Assembly (NCBI GenBank): GCA_977030845.1
Contig: OZ365117.1
Location: 5,704,001 to 5,768,000 of the forward strand
Reading direction: 5' to 3'
From: Fimbriosthenelais zetlandica
Taxonomy: Eukaryota
DNA: 64,000 nucleotides
The notes beneath the pieces are model-generated. The model did no database searches. It saw only the letters and a list, made by a program, of their open reading frames with translations, and had not been told where the DNA came from. This document shows, piece by piece, positions 1,623 through 64,000 of the stretch (position 1 is its first letter; each line of letters opens with the position of its first letter). Position numbers and translations under genes: made by a program.

Positions 1623-1674
<52 letters not shown>

Positions 1675-1834
1675 GGGAGAGACCTGAGCNNNNNNNNNNN
1701 NNNNNNNNNNNNNNNNNNNNNNNNNNNNNNNNNNNNNNNNNNNNNNNNNNNNNNNNNNNNNNNNNNNNNNNNNNNNNNNNNNNNNNNNNNNNNNNNNNNN
1801 NNNNNNNNNNNNNNNNNNNNNNNNNNNGAAAGAT

Positions 1835-1876
<42 letters not shown>

Positions 1877-13700: not shown

Positions 13701-16700
13701 TTCTTTCTCAAATTTGTGTTCTATTCCCAAATAGTCCACTTGATATTGAAGGTATTTTTTTATTTCAGGTCATTATTGCCCGGCCAGTACTGTGAGCTTC
13801 CCCCGCACTCTGCCCGTACCCTGCCCAACCGGAACCTTTAATAACCTTACAGGTCTGAAACAGGAAAGTGACTGTACAACTTGTGCCCCGGGCAAATACT
13901 GCTTCTCTCCAGGTGAATTTATTTATTCAGTTGAGAATTATATACTATAATATATTGGACCCTACCTTGGTAGATTAGCTCCTTATGATGCATCTCCACC
14001 AATGTTTTTGTTGTACGTCTCTTTTTTCTCAAGGGTTATTCAGCGGTGGAGCTCTGATTTTGCTACAGTCGCAAGGATCGCAAGGGCATCCATGGGACCC
14101 TTGCGACTTGGCGGCGACATCTAAATATTCAGATATATGGTCACTAATAATGTATGTGCCATTCTAGCTAAGTCCAGAAGTCACAATGAAAAGACTTCCA
14201 AGATAGAGAGAGAAAGAGACAGTGAAAGTGACAAATCACTTGGCACTCGATTGAGCTCCACCATTGACAATTATTGGGTATATTTTCACAGGTTTGGTAG
14301 AACCAGAAGGCGACATTGCACCAGGATTCTGGTCCACCCAGGGCTCCACCACACCTGAACCAGCCAACGATGACAGTACAGTACTTGGTCAATGTCCGCG
14401 TGGATTCTACTGCCCCGCCGGCAGTGTCCTGCCCACCCCTTGCCCTGCGGGTACCTACGGCTTTGGTTGGATGTTGCCAGCAGTCAGTAGGTGCACTCAG
14501 TGTCCACAGGGTCAGTTCTGCCCCATGACCAATATGACCAGTGCTGGGGGTGACTGTGATGCGGGATATTACTGTTCATTGGGATCACCAGTACAAGCTC
14601 CCGTCAATGCTACCTATGGTGATATATGTCCACCTGGTAAGATACCAATTCATTACTTTTATCCTTCATTTGTTTGTTTGTTAAACATTTTATTGAGTGT
14701 TCAAATGGAATACCCATCAGGCATAAAGCCTGGTTTCCATGGGCATCCAGGTTTACATGTATATAGTCAAATTCAATACTAGTGGAAATAATTTTTTTGA
14801 TTTCATTGATTTCTTTGCAGTGGATAACCTGCTATGTTGTGCCTTTTTGACCCTTGGTGCACAATAACCCCTTTGCAGAAACTTATGATCGTATCTCATT
14901 TTTATGATCTTATCTCATTTTTATGATCTTATGAGATGAGACACTGTTAGGAGACTTATCCCTGCCATGGCTCCTGGTCCCACCCTAGTTCTGTCAACAG
15001 AGGGACAGGCTGTCCCCTGTCAACATTTCCAGATCCCAGCACCATCATCTATGATTATTCTTGAATCCACAGGTCACTATTGCCCCGTGAAAAGTGGTTA
15101 CCCGAGGCCCTGTGGGGAGGGCACGTTTCAGACTGAGGTCGGGCAATCTAACTGTGAGACCTGTACTGCTGGGAATTACTGCCCTGAAGGCTCAGCGTCA
15201 CCTGTTCCCTGCCCCGCTGGTTTCTTCTGTCTGGCCAATCAAGGACAGAACGACACCAACCCATGTCCTACGGGCAAGTACAGTAACATTACAGGACGGA
15301 GCTCAGTGTCAGAATGTCTCGACTGTCCCCCTGGGTGAGTACATGCCAAACATTAAATTGTCTTGATGCCTTTTTCAGAACAAGCAGTGTTAATTTCTTC
15401 GTCTTCAGTAGATTTTCCCTTCTGAAACCCTTGATATCCTGTCAAAGCTGTCACAATCACAATGCCTTATCCAACAGTGCAGGCCTGAGGTTTTGATGGA
15501 TTTTAGAATAGGCTGTCTTTATTTCTTCAGTGAATTTCCCTTCTGAAACCCTTTAGATCAATCATCCTAAGAGCTGCCTTCAGCCTTAAGACAAACATTA
15601 AGCCTTCAGTAAGCCTCAGAAGATAAGGATATAACTGTTAGGTTTTAAAAGACTACTTCTGACTTTCTGAATGACTCTCTCTTTCTCCAGGTTCTATTGC
15701 GGCACAACAGGCTTGTACGAACCCACCGGTCCCTGTAGCCCTGGTTGGTACTGCACTCTGGGTGCTCAGTTTACCACTCCCATCAACTCTAACCAGGGTG
15801 GGCGGTGTCAGCCGGGTAGTTTCTGCCCCGGTGGGAGTGCTGAACCTACTCCTTGTTCACCGGGTCAGTATTGTCAAGATGAAGGCCTGGAGGCGCCTAA
15901 TGGTAACTGCTCCAGGGGTTACTACTGCTGGCTGGGTGCGAGCTCAGCCTCCCCTCAAGGCGACGACACTGGTATGTTCTCTATACTTCTTAGCCATTTA
16001 CTACGTTCTCTTATAGGCTGATCCACAAGATGCAGGTTTAGTGGGGGCGCAGGTGGCGCCCCTCCCCATTCTTTGATGGCTAACGTAACCCTAAACCTAG
16101 GTTTTAAGCCTAGGGTTAATCCTAAGCCTAGGTTTAGTGTTGAAAGCAGAGTGACAGCAATGTCAGTCTCATCATTTCAAGCCTTTATAACCTGTGACAT
16201 TGCAAGAAAGGCAGTGCTCGGTCTCGGTGTATGGACCAACCACATTATTCTATTGGTAGGACTCCACTGCACCGCAAGTCACTTGCGGCCGTCTTGCGGC
16301 TGTACTTGTTCTATTTTTTCTGCGGGTGTTGATGTCCTTGCGGTGCTTGCGGTATTATATTATATTATATAATATATATTATTATATTGCGGTATGCATA
16401 TTGAAGTCCTGTGGTCCTCTGCACTAAAAGGGGTGCCTTGCACTATTCCTCTTTGAGATCCTGTCAATCTGATGGTCTTGCTTGGTGTATTCTCTTCATT
16501 ATAGGTAAAATATGCTATATGATACAATCCTATGTCCTCTGGCCTTCTGCCCTCACTGACACTTCTTTCTAGATCCTATATAAACTGATGTTCTTGCTTT
16601 GTTTATCTAGGTGGACCCTGCCCTATGGGTAGTTACTGTGATCCTGGCAGTACAAACGGCACAGGTTGCCCACCAGGGACCTTCCTCAACGTGACGGGAG

Positions 16701-19700
16701 GAGAGACAGTGTCTGACTGCTTTGATTGTACTTCCGGTTCATACTGTGCGGGATACGGCAATGTGGCGCCCTCTGGACTGTGTGCTGGAGGCTACTACTG
16801 CCCTAGTGGGATGGTCACTTCATCCCCTCCACTATATGTCTGTCCACAAGGTGAGTGACCATTGAATTAATAGATAAACCTGACCGATGGTAGGTCTGTA
16901 TGGTAGTATGTCCCTGGGCTGAGGTGATGTTGCAGGGGTGCAAGCCAAGGGCATACCAGACCCTCAGCCCCAGGGACATGCCACCTTTCCAGATCTTCCA
17001 GAGTTCTATATTTATCTCTCCTGAAACCAGAGGTGAAATGTTTCATAATTCAAGGCCCCAATCGTCACATTTTCGATGCCTCTTTCCCCTGTGTTACCTA
17101 TCTTGCATTTATCTGAAGTCTTCAAAGCTCAAACCTCAGCCCTTGTCTCCAGACAACTTAAATAATATATAAGAAGAGGCTTAAATGACATTAAACCACC
17201 ATTCCAACACAAAATCGCAAGAAATGTTTTGTTTTTTAGGTCATTTTTGTGCTGAGGGAAGCATCGAGCCAGTGAGGTGTGACTCGGGAACGTTCCAGGA
17301 TGAGACTCAGCAGGCAGCGTGCAAGCCGTGTCCTGAAGGCTTCTACTGTGATAACACATACCAACCAGTGGTTCTCTACAATAGCAGCTACTGCCCTGAA
17401 GGTTAGCTATTAGAATTAAACATCGTTTTCGTTAAAATGCTTTCAGAAAGATCATGAGTTCTTGAAAACCTCACACCATGATTGACATGTCCGTAAATTT
17501 GTGTCTCTTTTTGAACGGTTTCTTGTTTGGATAGTAGATTTGTTGTTCCCTAAAGATGATTGTTTTCATGCCAATTTGTCTCTGAATTCAGGATGTTTTT
17601 CTGGAAGCCTGTTTGATAACTCTTGAAGATGGCATTTTCATGGCCGTTTGTCTCTGATTTTAGGTTTCTATTGCCCTCTTGGTACCAAGTATCCTACAGA
17701 ATACCCATGTCCTCGCGGGTCATACGGTAACTATATCGGCATGCAGAACATGACTGACTGCCAGGCCTGTCCTGCTGGATTCTACTGTGATGCGGACGCC
17801 CTGACCAACTACACCAAGACCTGCACAGCTGGGTTAGTTAATACACTTCTTAGAATCCCGAAAACAGAAACCAAAACTTTAGATGTCCTTACAGTCTGTT
17901 CACTCAAAGTTGATCCAAAACCACCATACATTTGTACTGTGGGTTCGGATCAACTTAGAGTAAACAGACAATAGCTCTCGCACAACTGGAGAACCTTCAG
18001 TCACACAATCTTAAAACCCCAACAAGACCCAAACTTTAAAAAACATATAGGATCATAACTGGACTTAGCTCTGGCACTCCAGTGACTGGAAAACCCTCGG
18101 GGACACAATTAAACGAAAACATTCTGTGAAAATTAATTATAATTTGAATATTTCAGATATTACTGCCGTTCATCGGCTGCTTCTGGCACACCGGATCAAG
18201 GCTATGAGGCAGATGAGTGTCCCACTGGTCACTACTGCCCAGAAGGTACAGCAGAACCCATGCAGTGTCCTATAGGTACCTTCAGTAATCAGACCAAACT
18301 GACCAGCGTAGACCAGTGCCTCAACTGTACTGCAGGTAATGTGACATCTTCGTAATTTATCTCTATATGCCACTGTATAATCTGCTGCCGCACCCCTAGG
18401 TAGCCCAGGTAGAAGTTGTAAATGGGATTGTAGCCCCACTGGGGTTCGTTTGCATTGCGAGGTATGCGATTTTATTGCGGCTAGCCCTTGTGGCAGACCT
18501 TTCTATGGTCCAGTGGAGCTTTTCACACATTGGTTATTTTCATTTGTACTTTTGACAGGTTATTATTGTGCCAGCAGTGGCCTGTCATTGCCATCTGGGA
18601 GCTGCTACGCTGGATACTACTGTCCTGAGGGAGCTGATGCTGCTACTCAAGTCATCTGTCCTAGCGGCTACTACTGTACTAACACCAGTACTGACCCCAC
18701 CCCCTGCCCACCAGGTCAGTCAGACTTAATTCATATAATACACTTTTTCACACTTGTGGCCCTTGTGATTTTATCATGCGGCTCTCTAGTTGCGGCTGGC
18801 CGTCCATGCGTCTTCAGATCTGATCGAAATTTTTGGATCAGACTGCACGAAATCATGCGGTTTGCGGTCCTTGCAGCCCTTGAATTTCGAATGGAAGATA
18901 CCAACCGCAATGACAGCAAAACCGCAATGATTCCCGCTCATATTTGTGATTTTTTAGCTTCATCTGTTAACAGCTTTTCTTGTTTTTTTTATCCAGGAAC
19001 CTATAACAATGTGACAGGTATAGGGTCAGAGGCTGAGTGCACTATTTGTCCAGGAGGGGAGTACTGTGAGGGTGATGCTAACACTCAGCCTACTGGAGTG
19101 TGTGTCGAAGGCTTCTTCTGCCCCCCAGGATCAAGTGAGAAAGAACCCCAGGATAATTTCTGCCCTGTAGGGAACTTCTGCCCAGCTGGCACCTCGCAGG
19201 CTTTACCATGCAGAAACAACAGCCATGTGAGAGTTTATTCATTGTATTATTTTAAACATTTGATTAAAAATCTCTTTTTTAAACTTCTGCACAATTTTAA
19301 AAAAAAAAGTGGTTAAATGCTCGCCATGTCTCCCACTGTCTGTGGTGAAAGGCATGTAAAAGGCCAGTCATGTCTCCCATTGTCTGTGATGAGAGGCATG
19401 TAAAAGGCTAGCCATGTCTCCAATTGTCTGTGCTGAAAGAACCACTGCTGCCTTTGTGTCATGTTATTGCCATCTATGTTAAGCAACCACTCACTCATAT
19501 CTGCATGTACAGTCTTTAGAAATAAGTATCTCCCCTTGTTCTTTATACAGGTGAACCACACCCATGCGGTCATGTGTGAACCATGCCCCTCCGGTCACTA
19601 CTGTGTCCTTGCTGGCCTGTCAGAGGACTGTCCAGCTGGCTATTACTGCCCAGCCGGTACCGGTCTGGACTGGCGGGCGTGTCCACGCGGTACTTACAGC

Positions 19701-22700
19701 AGTCTTACCGGTCTCTACGACCAGTCACAGTGTGAACCATGCCCTGCTGGGAAGTACTGTGGTGGAGAACATTTATCAGCGCCATCTGGTGAGGATTGAA
19801 GCTATTATACCCTGTCTTTAACCTTATTAATATGTTCCCCTCACGTAAATCGACTTAGGTCCCTAGTTTAGACCTTAGACGACTCCCAAAAGTGTACCAC
19901 CATCTGCTATTATTCAGGGATATCATTCTGTTAATAAAGATAGCTATGCATGCCAGTCATTTGGACCAATCTAAGGCCGTCCAAGAGGCTTTGATCCAGT
20001 CCAAAAGGGACCCACCATATGAAAGGAATATCTCCTATTCTATCCAGACTTTGCCCTTCATTCCACTGTCCTGAGGAAGCTCTCTCTATTTCCCTTTACC
20101 TGTATCTCGATGCCTCCATGTAGGGCTGCCCTAGCCTATATGATCAGCCCCTTCCAGGGTTACACAGACTCCACCCTTTTCCTGGAATAGGGATGGATAC
20201 TCTATCTATAATATGATATGACTTTCTTGCTTTTTTTCTCAGGTAATTGTTCGGCAGGCTATTGGTGTCAGTACGGCATTGACCGTCCTAATCCCGGTGG
20301 ACCCAACCAGACAGAACCTCTCAACAACACCTGTTATGATGACCGGCCTGTGGGTAAGGGAGGGGTGTGTTCTGTAGGACATTACTGCGAGGAAGGCAGC
20401 TCCTACCAAACACCATGTGATAACGGAACGTACGCTGATGTGGAAGGACTAGCAGCTTGCCTCCCTTGTCCTCAAGGTTTGTTTCTTTGCTATCCAGATT
20501 TCCATTTGATTTTCCCATTTCTCCAAGCTCTGAATCAGCCCAAGTTGCATGGGTCACAAGGCGTCCATTGGACCCCTTGGGACTACATCTGCAAGAGTCG
20601 CAAATCACTTGGGACTCGATGGAGCCTTATCGGCACCATAATGTTATTGCATATGATATTTACCCTTATTAGGCCCCCTTAACTACTGAGATAGACTTCA
20701 TTAAAGTTACAATGTATTGGTGAATTACCAATGTGAATTCTTCTGAATTTTGATAAGATTTTGGTCACGGGGCTTTAAACCTTGTAGTATGATTATATTA
20801 AAGGAGTTTGGGGACTGAGAAACACTGTTCTGAATGACTTATTGTTGTTGTAGGTTTCTGGTGCCCACGGCAGGCAGTGAACTACACTGAGAACCCATGT
20901 CCTGTTGGCTATGTGTGCCCTGAAGGCACCAAGTACTGGACAGACTACCCGTGTCCTGCTGGTACCTACAACAACCAGACCCAGCGCTACAACTCTGCTC
21001 TACACTGTACTCCATGTCCAGGTCTTTACTTATCTCATTTATTCATTCACTATTCATTCATTCATTCATTCATTCATTCATTCATTCATTCTTTATGGTT
21101 CATAAAGGTGGGACTCCACTGCTGCGACAGTTCTTGCGACACTACAGCGACAAAGGTTATGCTTGTATCGCAACAAAATTAATAATTTGAAGTGTCTAAG
21201 GCCTTAAGGAGGTCTTCCACTGAGTCAGTTCTCATTGCTACACCTGCATCACCTTTGTCGCTGTAGTGTCGCAAGCACTGTCGTAGCAGTAGAGTCTCAC
21301 ACTTAGAGTCTTCTGTTTTTCAATTTAAACTATATTTATCCATCTTTCAGCTGGTAAGTTTTGTAGTGAGGAGGGTCTCTCAGGGCCCTCTGGTGACTGC
21401 ATGGCTGGGTACTACTGTTCGGCCGGTGCCGTGGTGGACGCCCCCACTGATCGTACCACTGGAGACTACTGCAGGGCGGGTCATTACTGTCCTGCTGCCT
21501 CAGCCTTCCCTGTACCCTGCTCACCTGGGGATTACTGTAATGCTGATTACCTGAATGGTACCTCAGGCCAGTGTGACCCGGGCTATTACTGTCATTCATA
21601 CGCTATTGTTCCAAATCCTGATGACAACAATGCTACAGGTTAGTACCCTTACTAGTCTTGGTTTCTTGAGTGTGTTTTTACTAGTTTGCCTTTGTTAATG
21701 TTGCAGTCCTTTGTTAGTGTATTTCCTAAAAGCTGCAGTCCAGGGGGACCAAACTTTGTTCCTGAACTGTGCCTCTTAGTGCTGATACAAAATGTATGGA
21801 AGTGTTCATGGTGTTTATCTTTGTGTACCAGTACTGGGTCTAAACTGTTGGCTGTATGGAAGTGTACCCTAATTAGCAGGGGCTGTATACAACACCTCAA
21901 GAACTATAAGTTCTAAAATCTGGGATGTTCACTAAGGATTTCTCTTAATCTGTGTTTTTAGGGGGACCATGTCCTATGGGAGCCTACTGCCCGTCTGGCA
22001 GTGCCTCGCCCATCCTCTGTTCGTCGGGATACTACCTGAACAGTACTAGGAACAGTGATGTATCTGACTGTGTACTGTGCTCGCCTGGCATGTACTGTGC
22101 TGGCGCTGGTAATGAGGAACCTGATGGTCCATGTGCTGCGGGCTGGTACTGTCCACTGGGAACTGATGATCCCAGACCGACTGGATACAACTGTACCCAA
22201 GGTAAATGTTACTTATATTTGACCAGTTCAATTTGACCTGTAAAAAAGTTTGAAAAATCACCAAAATTTTATTTCATTCCAATTGACTTTAAATCATCTC
22301 AGGTAGTCTGTGGGGTGTTCTAGAGTAGGTGCAAGTGATTTTTGATTGGTATTGATAAAGTTGGGAAATGGAAGAAATTTCGATTTCTTGAACAGGTCGG
22401 GACCTGTAAAAAAGTTTGAAAAATCACCAAAATTTTATTTCTTACCAATTGACTTTAAATCATCTCAGGCAGTCTGTGGGGTGTTCTAGAGTAGGTGCAA
22501 GTGATTTTTGATTGGTATTGATAAAGTTGGGAAATGGAAGAAATTTTAATATCTTGAACAGGTCGGGACCTGTAAAAAAGTTTGAAAAATCACCAAAATT
22601 TTATTTCATTCCAATTGACTTTAAATCATCTCAGGCAGTCTGTGGGGTGTTCTAGAGTAGGTGCAAGTGATTTTTGATTGGTATTGATAAAGTTGGGAAA

Positions 22701-25700
22701 TGGAAGAAATTTCGATTTCTTGAACAGGTCGGGACCTGTAAAAAAGTTGGAAAAATCACCAAAATTTTATTTCTTACCAATTGACTTTAAATCATCTCAG
22801 GCAGTCTGTGGGGTGTTCTAGAGTAGGTGCAAGTGATTTTTGATTGGTATTGATAAAGTTGGGAAATGAAAGAAATTTTAATTAATATCTTGAACAGGTC
22901 GGGACCTGTAAAAAAGTTTGAAAAATCACCAAAATTTTATTTCATTCCAATTGACTTTAAATCATCTCAGGCAGTCTGTGGGGTGTTCTAGAGTAGGTGC
23001 AAGTGATTTTTGATTGGTATTGATAAAGTTGGGAAATGGAAGAAATTTCGATTTCTTGGACAGGTCGGGACCTGTAAAAAAGTTGGAAAAATCACCAAAA
23101 TTTTATTTCTTACCAATTGACTTTAAATCATCTCAGGCAGTCTGTGGGGTGTTCTAGAGTAGGTGCAAGTGATTTTTGATTGGTATTGATAAAGTTGGGA
23201 AATGAAAGAAATTTAAATATCTTGAACAGGTCGGGACCTGTAAAAAAGTTTGAAAAATCACCAAAATTTTATTTTATTCCAATTGACTTTAAATCATCTC
23301 AGGCAGTCTGTGGGGTGTTCTAGAGTGGGTGCAAGTGATTTTTGATTGGTATTGATAAAGTTGGGAAATGGAAGAAATTTCGATTTCTTGGACAGGTCGG
23401 GACCTGTAAAAAAGTTTGAAAAATCACCAAAATTTTATTTCTTACCAATTGACTTTAAATCATCTCAGGCAGTCTGTGGGGTGTTCTAGAGTAGGTGCAA
23501 GTGATTTTTGATTGGTATTGATAAAGTTGGGAAATGAAAGAAATTTTAATATCTTGAACAGGTCGGGACCTGTAAAAAAGTTTGAAAAATCACCAAAATT
23601 TTATTTCATTCCAATTGACTTTAAATCATCTCAGGCAGTCTGTGGGGTGTTCTAGAGTAGGTGCAAGTGATTTTTGATTGGTATTGATAAAGTTGGGAAA
23701 TGAAAGAAATTTCGATTTCTTGGACAGGTCGGGACCTGTAAAAAAGTTTGAAAAATCACCAAAATTTTATTTCTTACCAATTGACTTTAAATCATCTCAG
23801 GCAGTCTGTGGGGTGTTCTAGAGTAGGTGCAAGTGATTTTTGATTGGTATTGATAAAGTTGGGAAATGAAAGAAATTTAAATATCTTGAACAGGTCGGGA
23901 CCTGTAAAAAAGTTTGAAAAATCACCAAAATTTTATTTCATTCCAATTGACTTTAAATCATCTCAGGCAGTCTGTGGGGTGTTCTAGAGTAGGTGCAAGT
24001 GATTTTTGATTGGTATTGATAATGTTGGGAAATGGAAGAAATTTCGATTTCTTGAACAGGTCGGGACCTGTAAAAAAGTTTGAAAAATCACCAAAATTTT
24101 ATTTCTTACCAATTGGCTTTAAATCATCTCAGGCAGTCTGTGGGGTGTTCTAGAGTAGGTGCAAGTGATTTTTGATTGGTATTGATAAAGTTGGGAAATG
24201 GAAGAAATTTCGATTTCTTGAACAGGTCGGGACCTGTAAAAAAAGTTTGAAAAATCACCAACATTTTATTTCATTCCAATTGACTTTAAATCATCTCAGG
24301 CAGTCTGTGGGGTGTTCTAGAGTAGGTGCAAGTGATTTTTTATTGGTATTGATAAAGTTGGTAAATGGAAGAAATTTCGATTTCTTGAACAGGTCGGGAC
24401 CTGTAAAAAAGTTTGAAAAATCACCAAAATTTTATTTCATTCCAATTGACTTTAAATCATCTCAGGCAGTCTGTGGGTTGTTCTAGAGTAGGTGCAAGTG
24501 ATTTTTGATTGGTATTGATAAAGTTGGGAAATGAAAGAAATTTCGATTTCTTGAACAGGTCGGGACCTGTAAAAAAGTTTGAAAAATCACCAAAATTTTA
24601 TTTCATTCCAATTGACTTTAAATCATCTCAGGCAGTATGCGGGGTGTTCTAGAGTAGGTGCAAGTGATTTTTGATTGGTATTGATAAAGTTGGCAAATGG
24701 AAGAAATTTCGATTTCTTGAACAGTACACTGAGGACTTAAGAGCCCAGCCCTCTGCTTAAATCTAGTGGGCTTAAGCCGGGACTCCACTGCTGCGATTTT
24801 GCTTGCAACACGACTGTGACAAAGGTGATGCTTGTGAAGTTGTGTAAGAATAAAATTTATAAATTGTGGTTCAAGTGTCTAAGGCCTTAAGGCCGTTGTT
24901 CAATGGTAAATTTATCATTGAAACACAAGCATCACCTTTGTCGCAGACGTGTCGCAAGCAAAATCGCAGCAGTGGAGTCCCGGCTTTATAGTAATGGACT
25001 GGGAATTGAAAGCCTTAACTCGTATCATTCTTTCTCATTGATTTGACTTTTTTAATGATTTATTTTCACACTAGGTCATTTCTGTGATGCTGGAAGCTCT
25101 GCGCCTCTGCCCTGCCCATCAGGTTACTACCAGGATGAGTTAGGACAGTCAGGTTGTAAGGACTGCCCAGCAGGATATTACTGTGACAGTATGGTCAGTC
25201 CTGTAGTCTCTTACAACACTACCGGATGTCCAGCGGGTGAGTCTAAAACCTGGATCACACTAATCCCATTCTCCAATCCTTCGTCATCTGATTCACCACC
25301 ATTTCTACTGACTTCAATACTTGAAATTGTGTCAGTGGTTAGCCTTACCTACGTGTAAGTGACTGTTAAAATTACAAGTATTTGGTGTGAATAGAAATAT
25401 AGTTTTGGACAGCTATTGGATGGTGCCAGATAGATAATCTGATTAGTGTGTTCCAGTCATAATTATAACCATCTCAGGACCTGGATTGAAGTGATCAGTT
25501 TGAGCCAAGATTGTCCAGAGGTAGAAGAATCAGACGAGAGACCCAGGTTTGATTCTTGTTCTGGCAAGGGGCTTTACCCTTGCAAACAAATCACTCCACT
25601 CTGAATTTTTTTCCTTGTTTGCAGGTTTTTATTGTGGTAATAACACGAGGTACGCCACAGAGTACCCCTGTCCAGCAGGCACCTATAGCAATCTCACCCT

Positions 25701-40700: not shown

Positions 40701-43700
40701 CAGGCAGTTTCTGTGGGGATCTAGCACTGACTGAACCAAGTGGACCATGTGCTCCAGGCTTCTACTGCCTGGAAGGGTCCACAACCAACACCTCTCTTGC
40801 CTGCCCGGGAGGTCGATTCTGTCCTGAGGGTAAGTGCCCTCAATCTCTGTTCATTAGGAACCTATATAGCACTGGGAAGACTTCCTGACATCCACTGTAC
40901 AATTTTTGAGGACCTCGATTTTTGCAACCCAAAAATTTGCTATAGATCATTTCTCTATTCATTTGCCATTGAAAAATCGGTTCCTAGAGTTTGGCGTCCA
41001 TTGGTCTGATCATCTGAACAGATTTTTAATTTGCTCCCCCGATCGCCTGTGATCGCCTAAGATCGCAAAATCGGGATGACTAACGGATCAATTGATGTCG
41101 GGCTTAAGTTCAATGTTTCTTGTAGGTACTGGCAGTCCTCAGCGATGTCCAAGTGGAACTTGGTCCAATGCCACCCAGCTGACAGCAGACAGCGAGTGTA
41201 CACCATGTCCACCAGGATGGTTCTGTCAACAGACAGGGCTGACCCAGCCCGAAGATCTCTGTAAGCAAGGATACTACTGTCCACAAGGATCGAGTGTTGA
41301 GAACCCATTGATATGTCCCATTGGTCTCCACTGCCCTACCGGCTCCGATCTGCCCAAGGCCTGCGTCTCTGGCACCTTCACTAATGTGTCGGGGGCATTT
41401 AGTTGTGACATTTGCCCTCATGGGTAAGTTACTTTTTCATTGTTTATTCTCTGCGGATTTGTCCCACAGAGCTGCGCATACCATAAATTTCCTCCTCAAA
41501 GATGCAGGAATTGCTCAATTCTATTGTTGTACATTGGTAGTCTTTAGGACAAAATTACAAGCAACATTCAATTTAGTCGAGGCTAGCTGGCCAAGGATTG
41601 AAGCGCTGTTCCATAGGCAATAGTTAGACCTATTAGTGGTTCCCTGGCCAAAAATGCAAGCATTGTTCCATAGAATCCACCATTGCTTCATGGAATCTTT
41701 TGGCTTATTGAGTCTTTCTTTATCTTGATCAGTTACCATTGCTTGCCTGAGAACGTGACTGCTGGAGACCCCACCTCTGGATACCATGATTGCCCCGCTG
41801 GATACTACTGCCCTGAAGGCACTGGTCTGGCATGGACACCCTGCCCTCAAGGCACCTACAGTTACCAGACAAACCTCCAAATGGTAAGCTCAATCTCTAC
41901 TTTTATTAATAGCTTTATAGGATTATATTTGTTATAAATTACTCTTAATACAGGCGTCAATAGGAATCAATTTCTTCAGGGGACCCCTGGCTACGAGCCC
42001 GACTCATAAAACCTAACTAATAAGAATAAGATAATAAATCTGGCCAACCCTTAGATTCCATGGGTGGACCCTTTAAACTTCAGGCTTTTGGGTCTCAGAG
42101 GCTTGAAATCTTCCCCTTGGAACAGGCTTTGGGGTCTCAGAGGCTTGAAATCTTCCCCTTGGAACAGGCTTTGGGGTCTCAGAGGCTTGAAATATATCCT
42201 TAGTAACTGAAGTTGGTTGTGAATATTCTTTATCTTTTCCCTCACAGGTGGAGCAGTGTCGACCGTGTGATGGAGGGTATTATTGTGGTGTAGATGGAGC
42301 CACTAACGTGACAGGGCTGTGTTCAGCTGGCTTCTACTGCCAGTCAGGAGTAGACAGGCCTAATCCCAACATAGCTGACATTACCAACTCTACTGGCTGT
42401 CCATTCCCATACGAACATTCAGGTAATCACTCAGTCACTTTCTAACCTGGATGGATTATCTGGCCTTCTCCAAGGCCTCTCTTTATAGATAATGGGTAAA
42501 ATGCTTAGTCAAAGGCCAGCCACATCTCCCGTTGGGGTCAGAGAGATAAAAGATATGTGGTGAGACATGTAAAAGGCCAGCCATGTCTCCCACTGTATGT
42601 GGTGAGAGGCATGTAAAAGGCCAGCCATGTCTCCCACTGTATGTGGTGAGAGGCATGTAAAAGGCCAGCCATGTCTCCCACTGTATGTGGTGAGAGGCAT
42701 ACAAAAGCCCAGCCACTGCCTGTGTTACTATATGTATTTTGATGTCTTGCTTGTTTATCTCTAGGGTATGGCGACATCTGTCCTCGCGGCTTCGCCTGTC
42801 CTCCCGGCTCTGTGGAACCCCTCGGCTGTAGCCCTGGCCAGTACCAGGACCAAGAGGGACAGGAATCCTGCATTATCTGCCCTTCAGGTGACTATAAATC
42901 CACTACTTTACTGCACTTATTCCACCACCATACTCGATTCTTGAATATCACCAATATATGGTCTATGGTGAGAGCCGTATAAAATGCCAGCCATGTCACC
43001 TACTGTGGTGAGAGGCATACAAAAGCCCAGCTAGAAACATTCAATTTAGTTGCTGGCAACCAACCAACTATGTGGGCTCCCATCCAGCAGGTGGCCTGCA
43101 GCGCATACAAACTATGGCAGTCATTTATAGTTATATATAGTGTGGACAATATATACAAATCATATACATTTTCCAGGTTATTTCTGTCTGGCCAACTCCA
43201 CCGAGTATCAGAACACACCCTGCCCATCAGGCTACTACTGTCCTGAGGGAACCACACGGTCAGATGAACGTCCTTGTGCTGCGGGGACATATAACCCCTA
43301 CACAATGAGGACCAATGAGACGGCGTGTGAGCCTTGTCTACCGGGCATGTATTGTATGGGAAGCGGGCTATCTAGTCCCACGTCAAACTGCAGGTGAGTG
43401 CCCGAAAATCTCTTCTTTTTTGCATAATACTCTCATTTTTTGAAAAAAATATTAGCAATCATGCCTCCATCTTTTGCCCAAAAGCTCTTTAATTGTGGGA
43501 CTTTCTTTACGGGACGTTTTCCTTGCCACTCTAGGACTAGTGCTGGTTCAGTCGCACATATATTTGTAACATTATCTAGATTTTTGAATGTGGTCACCAA
43601 AGACCAAGGGTTCCATGGATGCCCTTGCAACGCTAGCAACCTCAGAGCTCCACTTTTGATTGACCCTTGCATACTACAGATGCTAGTCACCACAGAAAAA

Positions 43701-46700
43701 TCAGTCACCAAAGTCCCATGGCAAATAGAGGTTACTGGAGCTACCCCAGAACATTTCGATCAGTTTTTACCATTTTCATTTGTTGCTGATTATTTCTGGA
43801 TTTTGTTTCAGTGAGGGCTGGTACTGTACATCTGGAGCCACTCAACCAATGCCTAGTAACCCCAGCGAGGGTGGAAGGTGCCAGCCTGGTACCTTCTGTC
43901 CTGGAGGCAGTGACTCACCTATCCCATGTACCGGGGGTTCCTTCTGTCCTATAGCAGGCCTAGCTAGCCCTACAGGCAACTGCAGCCAAGGTAATTGAAA
44001 TTAACTGAAAAGCATTAAGTCTACTTCTTGAAGTGGTGTCTCAGGAGGTGTCTTCGGCAGATTATGGTTCCAGCTACGAATTTTCTTGTGTACATCTCAA
44101 TACAATTAATTCTTCTCTAAATCTCTGTTTCTCTAATTGATGCTGATTGTATTTTATCTTATAAAAGGTTATTACTGTACGTTAAGTGCATCTGAAGCCA
44201 CCCCGAATGACAACGTAACCGGTGCCATATGCCCACGTGGTCACTACTGCCCCGGCGGTAGTAGCGGTCCCATCCCATGTAACATCGGCGACTACCTGGA
44301 AACTGAAGGCAACAGTCAACCCACCAGTTGTAAAACATGCGAAAAAGGCAAGTCCTTTTTGATCTACAAGACCTAATGTTTGGCAATTTGATTTTGAATA
44401 GTGAAATTGAATGGTGTTTAAATTCATTTTTGTTTTTTGGACCACAGGTTATTACTGTGACAGAGAAGGCTTGGCTGTGCCTGTTGCTCAGTGTGACCAA
44501 GGTTACTATTGTCCTAACGGCCAGGTAACAGCTACTCCTGGTAACTACACCTGCCCTGTTGGTCACTACTGCCCCGTGGGAAGCGGTGACCCAAGGCCCT
44601 GCCCCTCGGGCTACTACCAGGTAAGGCTGACCTTTATCTCAAGGAAACCAAGCTGGTTTTAAGCTGGGAGCTTAAGGAGAAGTGGGTTCAGGCTATAAGG
44701 TATCAGGTCATGGGTGTTGTTGCTGTTGGCGCTTGGGAATTTATGGTGTTGCTTCTTTATAGTTTGTATCACTAGTAGGCTATTACTTTAGAGGAGTGAT
44801 CATAAGTGGAGAGTTAATTATATTGTCTTTGTTATTTAGGACAACCCGGGTCGATGGACATGTAAATCGTGCCCGTCTGGTTACTTCTGTAATGCTACCT
44901 TCACACCTGTTGATGCCATCGGTTCCTCCATCTGTCCTGAAGGGTACTTCTGTCCTAACAACACCCGTTATGCCGAGCAGTACCCCTGTCCCCTGGGCAC
45001 CTTCAATAATAGGACAGGTCTGTGGTTATTTTGGTTATTTTTCATCACCATTTAGCTTGAAATCGAGTTTGATATTCGCTATGCAATTTAGAGAAGCAAG
45101 ACTCTGGAAACTTAACTTAAAGTTTGAAATCGGTTGTGAAATTTGGAGGGGGCGGGACTAAGAAATGTTCTGGGTAATTGGTATCAAAATATACCTTGAC
45201 TTAATGTTTTCGCTGTGAAATTTGGTTAGGCAATGTTCAAAAGATTGACATCAAAACATATTGTTTAAATATTGTGTTCAGGTCTGTCCGATGAGTCCCA
45301 GTGCACACCATGTGTGGGTGGGATGGCCTGTGATGTCATGGGTCTTGTGACACCCATCCGACCATGCGCGGCCGGGTACTTCTGTCGTGAGGGAGCCAAC
45401 ATGACTACCCCACAACTAGGTAAAGTCTGAAACATTTTACATATTAATATTAATCTCTGAGATATGTACAGCCTCCTATTCCTAGGGGAACAAAGAGGCC
45501 AGAGTAAGATCAGTTCAGCTGAAAATTAGGTTTCTGTTCCATTTTAAAGTCTTGGATTTTCTGTTGACAGGTGCTAATGCTGATGTCTGCCCTGCTGGGA
45601 GCTACTGCCCTGAAGGCACTGCAGAACCTATAGGATGTCCTGAAGGCACCTTCTCCCCGACCACCGGCATCATGGCCGAGTCAGACTGCCTCAATTGTAC
45701 AGGTGGCTACTTCTGTGATCAAATAGGTGAGGATGTTCTTTACATGGTCGATTAGAATCCAGATCTGTGACCGGTTTATTTCGCCAATTGTCACTATCCA
45801 GGCAATCATTAAGCAGATCTGTGACACGGTTATTCTCAAGAAACTGGACTCTTTGGACAAGCCATCTTTTCCTCTACTTATTCTTAAAATACACACTTTC
45901 TTTGGCCATCGTCCAGAGAGCCTTGAAGCAGGTCTTATGGATACAAGCTTTGAATTCTGCTACAGGCTTTGGAGACTCCTGAAAACCAATGTTTCTTTCT
46001 CTAAATTCCAGGTTTGACAGCTGTGGTAGGACCCTGTGTTGAAGGTTCATATTGTCCTGAAGGCTCACGACGTTCTGATCAAGAAGTCTGCCCTATGGGT
46101 TACTACTGTGGCCCGACTACTCAGTATCCTACACCCTGCAGTAATGGAACATTCGCTAATGCCACCGGCCTCACCATGTCCTCACAGTGTCTGGCTTGTA
46201 CACCAGGGGAATATTGTAATGGCTACGCCCTTACCGACCCCAACGGTCCTTGCTCTGCAGGTGAGCTCATCCAGATTTTCGGTAGCTCATTGGTTTCTAA
46301 TACAATTTGTTGGACCTAATCTGGATGCGATTTAGTTTAAAATATAATAATAAATGATCTCTGGGTTTCTGCAGGTTTCTACTGTCCTGAAGGATCCAGC
46401 CTTCCCACACAGATTATCTGTCCCATGGGTAAGCATTGTCCACCCGGCAGCTCTGAACCCCTCGGCTGCCCCGCTGGCTCTCTCTCTGACTACGAAGGGG
46501 CCGCGACATGTGCCATGTGCCCTGCTGGTAAGTTTCCTGCTAGAATGTTCAAAATTATATCAACCAAGTAATCAAAGTTACATAAACCTGTTCTTCCATA
46601 GTTGCCTGTGCTCAGATGGATTTTAAAAAACCAGCTTGCCATGGCAAAAAGGAGTCCCTTGTGTAAAAGCAGGTTGTTGCTTTGGAATAGCAAATTGTCC

Positions 46701-49700
46701 TTGTGACTTACTCACTCACCCCCTCACTCACTCACTCACTCACTCACTCACTCACTCACTCACTCACTCTCACTCACTCACTCTCACTCATTCTCCCGTC
46801 ATCTTTCAGGTCATTACTGTGTACCAGGATCTGTTGTACCAGGTGATATGAGCACCATTGTATTGGTCTGTCCGTTGGGTTACTTCTGTCCTAACGGTAC
46901 CGGCTATGACTGGCAAGCCTGTCCAGCAGGTAGCTACGGCAACCGATCTGGTCTCATGACAGCTAGAGAGTGCAGGCCTTGTGATGCCGGCTACTATTGT
47001 TCAGGTACTCCCCTTAGTCATAATGACACATTTCCAAAATATTTAAAATAAAGAAGTGATCATCAAAATCTTATTTCAAAAAATGTTTAACAGTTGAATC
47101 GATTGTCAATTCTTGATGTTTCAAATGAGTCACTTTCTGAAATGAATGGTCCAAACTTTACTTCCCTCTTCCAGGAAGCAACCTGACCAGTCCAACAGGT
47201 CTATGTGACGAGGGTTTCTACTGCGTCTCTGGTGCTGACCGGCCGAACCCACTCATGCTGAACGAGTCACAATGTCCATCAGACACCATCCACCCTGTGA
47301 TAGGCCATGTCTGCCATCCTGGTCACTACTGCCGAGCTGGGTCAACCTACCCTACAGCCTGCCCTGCTGGGTCATACCAGAGTCTGTCACAGCAGGCTGA
47401 ATGTCTACCGTGTCCAGACGGGTACTACTGCCTGGCTAACACCACTGATTTCACCTCCAATGTCTGCCCCACGGGGCATTATTGTCCACTAAGTACGCCT
47501 TCTGCATATGACAGGCCGTGCCCTCCAGGGACATTCAACAACCAAACGACAATGACTGAGGTAAGTCGGTAATAGAACTTGGGAAAGTTGGGTGTAGTTC
47601 TAGGGCCCTATATGGTCCAGAAATTTCGGGACCTCTGATTTTTTTCCTTAGGAGATCAAAAAAAAAGGAGGATCCAGTAAATATCTCTTACAATTCCACA
47701 CTGTCTTATGATAGCTGGGACAAATTTTTAACCAATACAAGTTGGGAACATTGGTAGCATTGAAGGACCAGTGGGTATAGCCCCAATTTAATTAAGGTTT
47801 GTCCTATAATGTGAACAGGGGCAGATTTCTCGCCAGTTGTTTCAGTCACCTAAACCCCCCCTGAAGATTTGGTATTAACCCTGATTAACCCCTGATTAAG
47901 GTCCTTGCTGTACTGTCTATTTCAGGTAGGAGACTGTCTGTCCTGTACACCAGGCATGTACTGTTCTGGAGTAGGTAATGTCGGACCTACAGGGCTTTGT
48001 GATGCTGGCTGGTTCTGTACAACTGCTTCTAACTCTTCACAGGTTGGTATCTTAGTCTTTATTTGTCCGTCCATTTGTTAAGGCTTTGACATCCACCTTG
48101 TCATCTTTATACTATTCCTGATATCAGTTGCCCAAGAGTAAAGCCTGGAGCAAACTAATCTGATTATCCAATCCATCGCCATGAGATCCCCCATTTCTAA
48201 TAGCATCCAATGATTGAAGGTTAGCCTTACCTAGGTTAGAAGATCTGTTCAAATTACAAGCATTTGGTGTGAATAGAAATATAGTTTTTCCTGCTTTCTG
48301 ATTTGTGCCTGCCCCTCAAGTATGGCAGCATTTATAGTACAGAAGTTAGTTCTGTATCTTACAATTTTACTGACATATATCTAACCTGTCTTTATTTGAC
48401 AGCCTGTTGAGAGTAGTATGGGAGGGGAGTGTGGAGCCGGTACTTTCTGCCCTGAGGGTTCAGAAGCACCCACCGACTGCACGCCTGGTTCCTACTGTAA
48501 CACTACAGGCCTCTCTCAACCTATCGGTCCCTGTGACGCTGGTTGGTACTGTCCTATAGCCTCCACCTCATCCAGACAGAGTGTCTGCCCCCGAGGCTAC
48601 TACTGCCCACAGGGGAGCGACCTCCCAGAGCCGTGTAGGAACGGTACCTACGGTCATACTACAAACCTAGCCACCAACGGAGAATGTAGGCTCTGTGATC
48701 CAGGCAAATACTGTAATGAGACTGGATCCACTAGTCCGACTGCTGACTGCTATCCTGGTAAGTTTAGTATTGATATACGGTCAAACAAGGGTCAAAAATA
48801 TAATTGGTCCTGTAAGATTCTTGAGCTGGAGTCTAGGGTATAATTTGGTTTGAAGAAATCGCATTTTGGCTATGCAAGTTAATTTTGCAAAGCAATCAGG
48901 ATCCAATCACGCGATTTTTAATCAATATAATTTTCTGATCACACAGGATATTATTGTCCAGACGGCCAGATGACCCCGACCCCCGGTGACTACATGTGTT
49001 GGAGGGGTCACTACTGTCCAGCAGGCGTGGGTGTACCACTGGTATGCTTCAATGGTACCTACCAAAATGACCTGGGTCAAGTCAACTGTAAACCCTGCGA
49101 AGCCGGTAAGTATTATAATTTACGAGGAACTTTCCAATACTTTCAGCTACAGCAAGACTATACAGGGGTGGATTTTAATCCAGATTTTGTTCCATAATAA
49201 AACGGACCCCCAAGTCTGAAATAGAAATGTCAGCTAGGAGCAGTCATAATCTGACAAAAGCCATGTGTCTTTAGGGGTCCGTCATAATTTTAGGGCGTCT
49301 CAGAACCACAGATCCCGTTGCAATCCACTATTTATGATCCAAGTTTTTTTCTTTACCCAGGATACTACTGTGATAACAGTATTGCCCCTGTGACTGGACT
49401 GAGCAACTATTCCTGCCCCGGTGGTCACTACTGCCCACCAGGTACAGCCTATGCACTACAGTACCCCTGCCCTGCGTCCACCTATAATAATGTGACGGGA
49501 CTCATCTCAGATGACCAGTGCCAGGTCTGTCCACCAGGCTACTACTGTCAGAATCCAGGACTGTCCACACCAGAGGGTCCCTGTGCAGCTGGGTAAGTTA
49601 CGGCACTTTATTGTTATATTTATTTTAGTTAGAATTTTTATAGAGGCTGTTATGGGTGAATACCAGTTCACACTCTTGCTTGCTCAAGTTTCCGTGTGAT

Positions 49701-63872: not shown

Positions 63873-64000
63873 GTACAGTTATTTATTAAAGTTCATGACA
63901 ATTTCAAACCATCACTTTCCTTTGTTAAAACTGCAACCTTACCTAGACAAAAGATCCTTGATATTACTTATAATGGTGCCTTCTGACTACCTGTACTACT

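What the first reader, a model, noticed from the sequence alone, without database searches (positions are those of the whole stretch)
15073..49592. Titin-like higher-order structure: ~690-aa super-repeat, about seven copies
Seen: four independent markers recur in the same order with the same period. (i) GWYC-type unit in exons 15691, 21351, 28909, 33791, 38311, 43812, 47926. (ii) (F/Y)Q(D/N)..CKxC at spacings of 688, 689, 685, 680, 691, 682 aa. (iii) P.(Q/L)(G/D)..A(D/N).CP in exons 18157, 26036, 30556, 35600/35859, 40177, 45282/45571. (iv) GTGxxW followed by G.DR(P/S)(N/D/Q)P at spacings of 694, 683, 694, 677, 691 aa. Copies are well diverged at DNA level. Inference: ancient block duplications whose period has been conserved, suggesting a molecular ruler or a periodic binding lattice along the rod.
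Basis: partly seen in the sequence, partly recalled or inferred. Interest (0 to 1): 0.7.

Follow-up and report, generated by a model that had tools for sequence, protein, structure and literature searches.

The report
Ancient 685-residue super-repeat, giant membrane protein
The outer part of a giant, unnamed cell-surface protein of this worm holds six and three-quarter tandem copies of a ~685-amino-acid block of about ten cysteine-rich units, and I found the same block in a relative of animals (an ichthyosporean), Hydra, sea urchin, amphioxus and cartilaginous fish, so it is a real and very old building plan whose purpose is unknown.

Summary

- **The repeat.** Self-comparison shows a short period of about 68.5 aa and a clearly stronger period of about 685 aa. 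Of 109 windows of 120 aa, 103 have their best non-self match at a multiple of 685.5 aa.
- **Extent.** There are six full blocks (15073-47314) and a three-quarter block (47321-50996).
- **Divergence.** Blocks are 43-47% identical in protein. Synonymous sites are saturated, and intron positions mostly differ between blocks.
- **The gene.** It encodes a giant type I membrane protein of an unnamed family found across eukaryotes. Database names include mouse Gm9195 and the misnomers "zonadhesin-like" and "SCO-spondin-like".
- **Conservation.** A profile built from the window's blocks matches end to end in ichthyosporean, amphioxus, sea urchin, stingray and nemertean proteins, and nearly so in Hydra. 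Blocks 1 and 2 each pair with their own counterpart in the nemertean Lineus, so those duplications predate that split.
- **Fold.** It is a ladder of disulfide bonds, as in TNF-receptor and ephrin-receptor cysteine-rich domains. The closest solved structure is Chlamydomonas mastigoneme Mst1.

Ancient block duplication with a conserved period is supported. The ruler or binding-lattice idea is untested, and block number varies between lineages from about one to seven. No paper I searched describes this architecture. The scan's notes show no earlier finding of it on other DNA.

The parts
94..63889 (+). Window part of one giant gene. My model has 117 exons and 7,836 aa. The gene continues on both sides: one more N-terminal-type exon lies about 1 kb upstream, and a conserved C-terminal domain lies 8-9.5 kb downstream.
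   Evidence: Exon-chain model. tblastn of homologue ends against the flanks. The model is computational only; no RNA run was listed.
96..4331 (+). N-terminal region with a different, simpler repeat of about 33 aa (offsets of 33, 66 and 99 aa). It is not part of the super-repeat.
   Evidence: Best-hit offsets for windows at aa 0-480. Homologues P0002 and P0004 start with the same kind of repeat.
7660..14635 (+). Partial, out-of-order pieces of the block (profile columns 254-641, 289-515 and 183-476).
   Evidence: hmmsearch with the block profile. Identity to full blocks is about 36%.
15073..20370 (+). Block 1 (aa 1747-2428, 682 aa, 73 Cys).
   Evidence: Block profile columns 1-693, 1001 bits. 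Pairs with Lineus P0012 block 1, support 100/98.
20377..28289 (+). Block 2 (aa 2431-3123, 693 aa). Contains a 2.9-kb intron filled with a 166-bp satellite.
   Evidence: Pairs with Lineus P0012 block 2, support 100/99, 52% identity.
28296..32764 (+). Block 3 (aa 3126-3806, 681 aa).
   Evidence: Most similar block elsewhere is P0005 block 3 (51% identity), but its partner changes between the two trees: P0005 block 3 (support 90), P0005 block 1 (89/50).
32771..37714 (+). Block 4 (aa 3809-4487, 679 aa). I left out a doubtful in-frame 69-nt exon at 34846-34914.
37718..42781 (+). Block 5 (aa 4489-5175, 687 aa). I moved the donor of exon 40177 from 40491 to 40413, because the extra open frame comes from a dispersed repeat.
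42788..47314 (+). Block 6 (aa 5178-5857, 680 aa).
   Evidence: Shares four intron positions with block 4.
47321..50996 (+). Block 7, a three-quarter copy (aa 5860-6369, profile columns 1-516).
   Evidence: Groups with the last partial block of stingray P0184 and Hydra P0210.
50997..56409 (+). Further cysteine-rich units with only partial block similarity, then the end of the cysteine-rich region.
56586..57673 (+). Conserved domain next to the membrane (...FYPIYD/DNLYNTNDKFDYGGFRTL...FAYQFNDPGAYAFY...). This is a hallmark of the family.
   Evidence: Same motif in P0001-P0013: YPVY.KD.L.NTN..FDYG.FR.
57674..57739 (+). Single transmembrane helix (LVILILLAAVFLVMVIIVLALV). My exon finder had cut this exon short at 57632.
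   Evidence: Hydropathy 3.69 over 19 residues in the open frame 57548-57760.
58396..58550 (+). Exon with the conserved cytosolic motif EFWDYTRQVDLEAFSSNTLYDIL.
   Evidence: Homologues carry FWDYERQVDLEGF..LYDKLEDQ just after the membrane helix.

Best explanation
The region is the central ectodomain of one giant type I membrane protein. The protein belongs to an old, unnamed family found across eukaryotes.

**Anatomy (shown).** The region holds 6.75 head-to-tail copies of a composite block of about 685 aa. Each block has about ten cysteine-rich units of the TNF-receptor / ephrin-receptor type, averaging 68.5 aa. Each block carries 72-74 cysteines.

**Origin (shown).** The block was not invented in this worm. 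It is an inherited module already present in the common ancestor of animals and ichthyosporeans. Arrays grew by tandem duplication of whole blocks. In this lineage at least blocks 1 and 2 had separated before annelids and nemerteans split.

**How it works (inferred).**
- Each block folds into a stiff, elongated ladder of disulfide bonds, so adding blocks lengthens a stalk that projects from the cell surface.
- Borrowing the ~11 Å spacing between disulfides seen in Mst1 gives very roughly 40 nm per block. This is not measured.
- The period stays near 685 aa because the cystine framework fixes the length of every unit. In alignment A1, 46 cysteine or glycine columns are invariant across 29 blocks from several phyla.
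- The ten units also keep individual identities. For example, one YQ...C..C unit lies at position ~250-300 in all but two of the 34 blocks checked in nine proteins (it sits at 213 in a stingray block truncated at its start and is absent from one partial Hydra block). This implies selection at the level of the block, not just the unit.

What that block-level role is (packing, bends, glycan sites or periodic contacts) is not known.
For: **Real and periodic.**

**One gene, type I membrane protein.** Continuous frame across 117 exons. Membrane helix and family motifs. Homologues are single proteins of 4,000-8,000 aa with the same layout.

**Ancient.**
- Four-fold sites are saturated.
- Intron positions are mostly not shared between blocks.
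- Block trees show one-to-one pairs across species. Lineus identity was verified through PMC8593623.

**Inherited block.** End-to-end profile matches of 620-800 bits, as tandem copies:
- P0001: 6
- P0212 and P0213: 6 each
- P0005: 4
- amphioxus P0204: 3
- stingray P0184: 3.5
- sea urchin P0206: 2
- Chromosphaera P0004: 2-3

**Fold.**
- AlphaFold2 model of an orthologous block (P0005:1911-2597, with 29 aligned blocks): mean pLDDT 89.
- Foldseek top hits are mastigoneme Mst1 (E 2.7e-21), then ELAPOR1 and TNF-receptor domains.
- A profile search of PDB sequences hits Mst1 at E 4e-17.
- Mst1's cysteine-rich tandem is a disulfide ladder with ~11 Å spacing (PMC10602792).

**Position-specific signatures across phyla.**
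Against: - The gene model is computational. No RNA run was listed. I corrected three doubtful exons, one donor and the membrane-helix exon by hand.
- The folded block is an orthologue at 51% identity, not the window's own spliced sequence. pTM is only 0.46, and no coordinates were available to me. Rod shape and length per block are therefore inferred, not measured.
- Deep nodes of the block tree are poorly resolved, so the order of duplications for blocks 3-6 is open.
- The taxa of P0001, P0005, P0022 and P0104 are unknown.
- Nothing here shows what the protein does.
Confidence: 0.75

Rival explanations
1. Ruler or periodic lattice. The 685-aa block matches the spacing of a partner or of neighbouring copies of the same protein. 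The array would then set a defined length, or offer binding sites at a fixed interval, for example by assembling side by side into an extracellular filament or coat as Mst1 does in mastigonemes.
For: - Unit identity within the block is conserved from ichthyosporeans to vertebrates.
- Block length is held to 670-715 aa in all lineages.
- The closest solved relative, Mst1, does build a periodic filament.
Against: - Block number ranges from about one truncated block (tetrapods, teleosts) to 6-7, so there is no common length.
- No partner is known.
- Mst1's assembly also uses Ig-like domains and a polyproline helix. Neither turned up in the parts I scanned.
- Nothing here tests binding.
Confidence: 0.2
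2. Pure by-product. Whole-block tandem duplication by unequal crossing-over is simply the easiest way to lengthen a repeat array. The period persists only because each unit's disulfide scaffold tolerates no insertions or deletions. The block as such has no function.
For: - Invariant columns are almost all Cys or Gly.
- Copy number is labile between lineages.
- Flanking regions contain shuffled partial blocks.
Against: - Under this view the ten units should drift toward one generic consensus, or be lost singly.
- Instead the order of the ten units and unit-specific motifs (YQ..C..C near position 280, GW[YF]C near position 108) are kept in blocks that separated before phyla diverged.
- Individual blocks remain recognisable one-to-one across phyla.
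Confidence: 0.25
3. Artefact. The periodicity comes from an assembly duplication or from my (and the reader's) exon choices.
For: The model rests on sequence alone. A few exons were adjusted by hand.
Against: - Copies are only 45% identical in protein and 51% in coding DNA, each with different introns.
- There are no N runs inside 15073-50996.
- The same block is found in independently predicted proteins of many species, one of them an intronless open frame.
Confidence: 0.02

Closest known systems
Unnamed family of giant membrane proteins with ephrin-receptor-like repeats (mouse Gm9195; fish si:ch211-286b4.4; Hydra LOC100202447; many entries auto-named 'zonadhesin-like', 'SCO-spondin-like' or 'TNFR-Cys domain-containing protein')
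   Same: - Same overall layout: thousands of residues of cysteine-rich repeats, a conserved domain next to the membrane, one membrane helix, the cytosolic FWDYERQVDLEGF-type motif, and a conserved C-terminal domain.
- The 685-aa block itself is shared.
   Different: - This worm has one of the largest arrays (6.75 blocks).
- Tetrapods and teleosts keep about one three-quarter block.
- No function or architecture has been published for the family in the library I searched.
Chlamydomonas mastigoneme protein Mst1 (PDB 8tx1, 8wa2, 9b4h)
   Same: Closest solved structure by sequence profile (E 4e-17) and by fold (E 2.7e-21). It has a tandem of cysteine-rich domains like those of ephrin receptors, forming a ladder of disulfide bonds, and it is extracellular.
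   Different: - Mst1 has nine Ig-like domains, only six cysteine-rich domains and a polyproline-II helix. It is not a membrane protein and has no 685-aa super-repeat.
- The match covers only its residues 1283-1841.
Titin A-band and nebulin super-repeats
   Same: Hierarchical periodicity. A fixed number of unlike units forms a block that is itself tandemly repeated. Units at the same position in different blocks are more alike than neighbours are. Block number varies between species (nebulin: PMC7754682, listed).
   Different: - Different folds (Ig/FN3, or nebulin helical modules), a different compartment (inside the sarcomere) and no homology.
- For titin and nebulin a partner filament with a matching period is known. 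Here none is.
Pfam PF07699 Ephrin_rec_like / TNF-receptor cysteine-rich domains (also ELAPOR1, SCUBE, SVEP1)
   Same: Same kind of small disulfide-rich module. Orthologous blocks pass Pfam's cut-off (24.7 and 33.7 bits against 23.1). ELAPOR1, TNF-receptor and EphA2 structures appear among the fold matches.
   Different: - Matches are weak, and Pfam sees only 2-3 of the roughly ten units in a block.
- The window's own best exon scores 21.4 bits, below the cut-off.
- The known proteins carry one to a few such domains, not more than a hundred.

Membership tests
Giant ephrin-receptor-like-repeat membrane protein family (Gm9195 / LOC100202447 type) | Conserved domain next to the membrane (YPVY.KD.L.NTN..FDYG.FR ... 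F.F...G.YVF) | tested here: met
   The window encodes FYPIYD-DNLYNTNDKFDYGGFRTLAEAH...FAYQFNDPGAYAFY at 56586-57207. The same motif is in P0001-P0013.
Giant ephrin-receptor-like-repeat membrane protein family (Gm9195 / LOC100202447 type) | Single membrane helix after the ectodomain, followed by the cytosolic FWDYERQVDLEGF..LYDKLEDQ motif | tested here: met
   Helix at 57674-57739. EFWDYTRQVDLEAFSSNTLYDIL at 58396-58550.
Giant ephrin-receptor-like-repeat membrane protein family (Gm9195 / LOC100202447 type) | Conserved C-terminal cytosolic domain (NAFRNS.YY....LF.R..R....G......H..AH) | tested here: met
   tblastn of the P0004 and Hydra P0210 C-termini hits 8.1-9.5 kb downstream of the window (L005 8090-9488; E 6e-16 and 5e-14).
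Giant ephrin-receptor-like-repeat membrane protein family (Gm9195 / LOC100202447 type) | The ~685-aa composite block in the ectodomain | tested here: met
   A block profile built from the window matches end to end in family members of several phyla.
Pfam PF07699 Ephrin_rec_like | Score at or above Pfam's gathering cut-off (23.1 bits) | tested here: inconclusive
   The best window exon scores 21.4 bits, below the cut-off. Orthologous whole blocks score 24.7 and 33.7 bits, above it, while an amphioxus block gets no hit.
TNF-receptor / ephrin-receptor type cysteine-rich fold | Elongated ladder of disulfide bonds with short beta hairpins | tested here: met
   The AlphaFold2 model has pLDDT 89 and consists only of short strands. 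Foldseek hits are Mst1 at E 2.7e-21, with ELAPOR1, TNF-receptor and EphA2 chains below it. The test was done on an orthologous block, not the window's own spliced sequence.
Titin/nebulin-type super-repeat (architecture, not homology) | Units at the same position in different blocks are more alike than neighbouring units | tested here: met
   103 of 109 windows have their best match at a multiple of the block length. In-register global alignment scores 1717, against 990-1160 when shifted by 3-7 units.
Titin/nebulin-type super-repeat (architecture, not homology) | Period matched to a partner filament (a ruler) | not testable with these tools
   No partner is known, and there is no structure of an assembly.
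Titin/nebulin-type super-repeat (architecture, not homology) | Ig/FN3 or nebulin modules | tested here: not met
   Only cysteine-rich units are seen in the exon peptides. Pfam gives no Ig or FN3 hit on the exons and the homologue part scanned.
Mastigoneme Mst1 | Nine Ig-like domains and a C-terminal polyproline-II helix beside the cysteine-rich tandem; secreted filament subunit | tested here: not met
   The window protein has a membrane helix and a cytosolic tail. No Ig hit was found in the scanned parts. I did not scan the whole N-terminal half against Pfam.

The most novel reading that the evidence does not exclude
The 685-aa block is a true structural period. One block would correspond to one repeat of a higher-order assembly, for example one turn of a superhelix or one register of side-by-side packing. 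Copies of this protein, alone or with a partner, would then build a periodic extracellular filament or coat anchored through the membrane to the cytoskeleton. This would be an animal and protist counterpart of the algal mastigoneme, with block number setting its height. It would give a function to a family found across eukaryotes (including mouse Gm9195) that has none today.
Probability: 0.2. Interest if true: 0.85.

Novelty: new variant of a known kind. Interest (0 to 1): 0.6.

Why it matters
Super-repeats are classic in the muscle proteins titin and nebulin, where they mirror the spacing of a partner filament. This is a second, unrelated case with different features:
- It is built from extracellular cysteine-rich units.
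- The ten-unit block has kept its length (670-715 aa) and its internal order since before animals and ichthyosporeans diverged.
- Individual blocks are still recognisable one-to-one between phyla.

The carrier is a giant membrane protein family present from oomycetes to mammals, and I found no published function or architecture for it. The block gives that family a defined unit for cloning, structure determination and cross-species comparison. It also turns the question of why the period is conserved into a testable one.

The block-specific intron positions, set against an intronless homologue, also make the gene a candidate natural experiment on intron gain.

Tried and rejected
- **RNA evidence.** Two look-ups for public sequencing runs (6 kb and 2.4 kb of the region) listed none. 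Read laying was therefore not used, and splice sites remain predictions.
- **ESM Atlas.** A search with the exon next to the membrane gave only weak beta-propeller look-alikes (score 0.90 or less, low recognition). I discarded it.
- **Pfam on C-terminal exons and on P0004:4300-7076.** Nothing beyond a weak Ephrin_rec_like hit.
- **PDB sequence search with the juxtamembrane and cytosolic part of P0004.** No hit.
- **Literature.** Searches for GCC2_GCC3 with 'giant', for 'ephrin receptor-like' repeats, for 'super-repeat' with 'cysteine-rich', and for Gm9195 found no description of this family or its block. Gm9195 appears only in gene lists.
- **Ungapped diagonal scoring.** Only a rough confirmation, because insertions and deletions blur it.
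- **Global-alignment shift test.** Uninformative for shifts of 1-2 and 8-9 units, because cheap end gaps let the alignment slide back into register.
- **First exon model.** It contained three implausible in-frame exons (3335-3391, 7373-7477, 34846-34914), one donor extended into a dispersed repeat (40491 instead of 40413) and a truncated membrane-helix exon. I corrected these by hand.
- **Assembly artefact or recent duplication.** Rejected.
- **Several separate genes.** Rejected because frame and phase are continuous and the homologues are single proteins.

Full report
**1. What is there**

The + strand of the window carries one very long gene made of short exons rich in cysteine. There are 130 stop-free cysteine-rich segments on the + strand against 44 on the - strand.

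I wrote an exon-chain program that uses codon log-odds trained on the window, generic splice-site weights and phase bookkeeping. It returned 120 exons. After inspecting the peptides I made these corrections:
- I removed three implausible in-frame exons (3335-3391, 7373-7477, 34846-34914).
- I moved one donor from 40491 to 40413, because the extra open frame belongs to a dispersed repeat.

I also saw that the true membrane-helix exon runs on past the model's donor at 57632, to about 57750; I noted this but did not rebuild the model, so it lacks about 40 residues there.

The final model has 117 exons and 7,836 aa inside the window. No RNA run was listed for the region, so the model is computational.

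**2. Check of the observation**

- Marker ii at spacings of 688, 689, 685, 680, 685 and 682 aa.
- Marker iii at 688, 689, 686, 679 and 685 aa.
- Marker iv at 694, 683, 1371 (two periods; one copy lost the motif) and 685 aa.
- GW[YF]C at block position 106-108 in six of seven blocks.

A self-BLAST of 120-aa windows gives an offset spectrum with a short period of about 68.5 aa. Much higher peaks stand at 685, 1370, 2055, 2740 and 3425 aa. Between aa 1760 and 6100, 103 of 109 windows have their best non-self match at a multiple of 685.5 +/- 15 aa. About 10% would be expected if only the short repeat existed.

A profile built from the six full copies finds the following:

| Block | Window coordinates | Profile columns |
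|---|---|---|
| 1 | 15073-20370 | 1-693 |
| 2 | 20377-28289 | 1-693 |
| 3 | 28296-32764 | 1-693 |
| 4 | 32771-37714 | 1-681 |
| 5 | 37718-42781 | 1-693 |
| 6 | 42788-47314 | 1-693 |
| 7 (partial) | 47321-50996 | 1-516 |

Both flanks hold only shuffled partial pieces of the block.

Full blocks are 43-47% identical to each other. Coding DNA is 51% identical. At four-fold sites of conserved codons the third base agrees in 31% of cases, against 28% expected from composition. Nearly all of the inter-block blastn hits inspected look like intronic repeats; one weak match (69% over 116 bases) lies in coding exons of blocks 1 and 2.

**3. What the gene is**

After the cysteine-rich part come, in order:
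- a conserved domain (FYPIYD-DNLYNTNDKFDYGGFRTL...FAYQFNDPGAYAFY);
- one hydrophobic helix (57674-57739);
- a cytosolic exon with EFWDYTRQVDLEAF..LYDIL.

A search of 1.84 billion representative proteins with one exon found 415 proteins at E <= 1e-30. Many have 4,000-8,000 aa and the same layout. Named members include:
- Chromosphaera perkinsii (an ichthyosporean), Intoshia linei and Fabomonas tropica;
- Hydra vulgaris LOC100202447, Branchiostoma belcheri and Diadema antillarum;
- sharks and rays, teleosts (si:ch211-286b4.4), frogs, reptiles and birds;
- mammals ('Predicted gene 9195'), plus oomycetes and Vitrella.

Automatic names such as 'zonadhesin-like' and 'SCO-spondin-like' are misnomers.

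The gene continues outside the window. One N-terminal-type exon lies about 1 kb upstream, and the family's conserved C-terminal domain lies 8.1-9.5 kb downstream.

I found no paper that describes the family. Gm9195 occurs only in gene lists. Earlier notes of this scan describe the genome as that of an invertebrate, probably a worm. I did not test that.

**4. The block is inherited, not local**

The window's block profile matches end to end, as single hits of 620-800 bits and 670-715 aa, in other species:

| Protein | Tandem full blocks |
|---|---|
| P0001, P0212, P0213 (taxon unknown) | 6 each |
| P0005 (intronless open frame) | 4 |
| Amphioxus P0204 | 3 |
| Stingray P0184 | about 3.5 |
| Sea urchin P0206 | 2 |
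| Chromosphaera P0004 | 2-3 |
| Lineus longissimus P0012 (truncated prediction) | 2 |
| Hydra P0210 | partial blocks |
| Tetrapods and teleosts | about one three-quarter block |
| Oomycetes | only the first ~400 columns |

Self-comparison of the homologues shows the same 670-705-aa period in many of them.

In maximum-likelihood trees of blocks the window's blocks are not a clade:
- Block 1 pairs with Lineus block 1 (ultrafast bootstrap / SH-aLRT 100/98).
- Block 2 pairs with Lineus block 2 (100/99; 52% identity).
- Block 3 is most similar to P0005 block 3 (51% identity), but the two trees give it different P0005 partners.
- Block 7 groups with the last partial block of the stingray and of Hydra (91/92; the stingray-Hydra pair itself has 100/95).

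Among deuterostomes, amphioxus, sea urchin, shark and ray blocks also pair by position, not by species. The accession of P0012's genome (GCA_910592395) is Lineus longissimus according to PMC8593623.

So the duplications of at least blocks 1 and 2 are older than the split between this worm's lineage and nemerteans. A terminal three-quarter block may go back to the ancestor of cnidarians and bilaterians. Deep nodes for blocks 3-6 are unresolved.

**5. Inside the block**

- Each block has 72-74 cysteines.
- In an alignment of 29 blocks from many taxa, 46 columns are invariant (all Cys or Gly) and 40 more are nearly invariant.
- The short period divides the block into about ten units (ten peaks between 0 and 685 aa). 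The units are unequal, at 52-94 aa by the spacing of the CP.GT[YF] cores in the consensus.
- Units keep their identity. A YQ...C..C unit lies at position ~250-300 in all but two of the 34 blocks checked in nine proteins (it sits at 213 in a stingray block truncated at its start and is absent from one partial Hydra block), including the ichthyosporean ones. GW[YF]C lies near position 108 in most.

**6. Fold**

AlphaFold2 on an orthologous block (P0005:1911-2597, 51% identical to block 3), given the 29-block alignment, produced mean pLDDT 89 and pTM 0.46, with only short strands. A low pTM is usual for long modular chains.

Foldseek's best PDB matches are the Chlamydomonas mastigoneme protein Mst1 (E 2.7e-21), then ELAPOR1, TNF-receptor family domains and EphA2. 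A sequence profile search of PDB also finds Mst1 (E 4e-17) and TNF-receptor domains.

In Mst1 this tandem is a ladder of disulfide bonds spaced about 11 Å apart (PMC10602792). If that spacing held here, 36-37 disulfides would make a block roughly 40 nm long. This is an extrapolation, and I had no coordinates to measure.

Pfam's Ephrin_rec_like model passes its cut-off on two orthologous blocks but not on the window's best exon.

**7. Gene structure**

The seven blocks carry 7-11 introns each, at 48 distinct profile positions. Blocks 1 and 2 share five positions, and blocks 4 and 6 share four. Otherwise positions differ. Of 116 introns, 88 are phase 1, typically in the glycine codon of G-[YFH]-[YF]-C. 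No intron marks the block junctions. Together with the intronless homologue, this suggests many introns arose after the duplications.

**8. Interpretation**

Shown:
- a real, ancient, conserved composite block;
- growth of the array by whole-block duplication;
- a membrane-anchored giant ectodomain;
- a disulfide-ladder type of fold.

Inferred:
- The array is a stiff stalk whose length rises with block number.
- The period is held by the cystine framework.
- Conserved unit order and unit-specific motifs imply selection on the block as a whole.

It is untested, and copy number varies widely among lineages.

A separate note of this scan reports a ten-domain super-repeat in a titin-like gene 2.66 Mb away in the same genome. 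That is a different gene with different domains and has no bearing here.

Noticed in passing
window 15073-50996 (all introns of the seven blocks): Intron positions are mostly block-specific: 48 distinct positions, with only blocks 1/2 and 4/6 sharing several. Of 116 introns, 88 are phase 1 and sit in the Gly codon of a recurring G-[YFH]-[YF]-C motif. A homologue (P0005, locus L002) is an intronless 3,177-aa open frame. This is a possible case of many parallel intron gains at a recurring proto-splice site.
   Followed up: partly
window 22235-24724 and 59372-61717: Two arrays of about 15 copies of the same 166-bp satellite lie in opposite orientation in two introns of the gene (94-95% matches).
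   Followed up: no
window ~21022-21179, 24741-24887, 40414-40491: A dispersed element with an open frame (...GLHCCDSSCDTTATKVMLV...). In two of the three places it starts directly after a 5' splice site. It misled my exon finder at 40414-40491.
   Followed up: partly
window 19323-19439 and 42554-42715: The same 44-bp tandem repeat occurs in introns of blocks 1 and 5. It accounts for the strongest DNA-level match between blocks.
   Followed up: no
window 7811-8018: A 33-bp tandem array (6.5 copies) begins at the donor of exon 7646-7816 and repeats GGTAAGT. Another note of the scan (s1-193495) covers it. My model uses the first donor.
   Followed up: no
window 96-4331: The N-terminal part of the protein uses a different, simpler repeat of about 33 aa (C..CP.G..C......P..C..G.YS..G). 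The ichthyosporean homologues start the same way.
   Followed up: partly
L004 8780-9037; L005 8090-9488 (flanks of the window in G000:C29): The gene runs beyond both ends of the window. One more N-terminal repeat exon lies about 1 kb upstream, and the family's conserved C-terminal domain lies 8-9.5 kb downstream.
   Followed up: partly
P0001, P0212, P0213 (proteins from unnamed ENA/Logan contigs): Three proteins of about 7,600-7,800 aa from an unidentified lineage each carry six tandem full blocks of about 700 aa. Most of these blocks group together in the tree, which suggests a second, largely independent expansion.
   Followed up: partly
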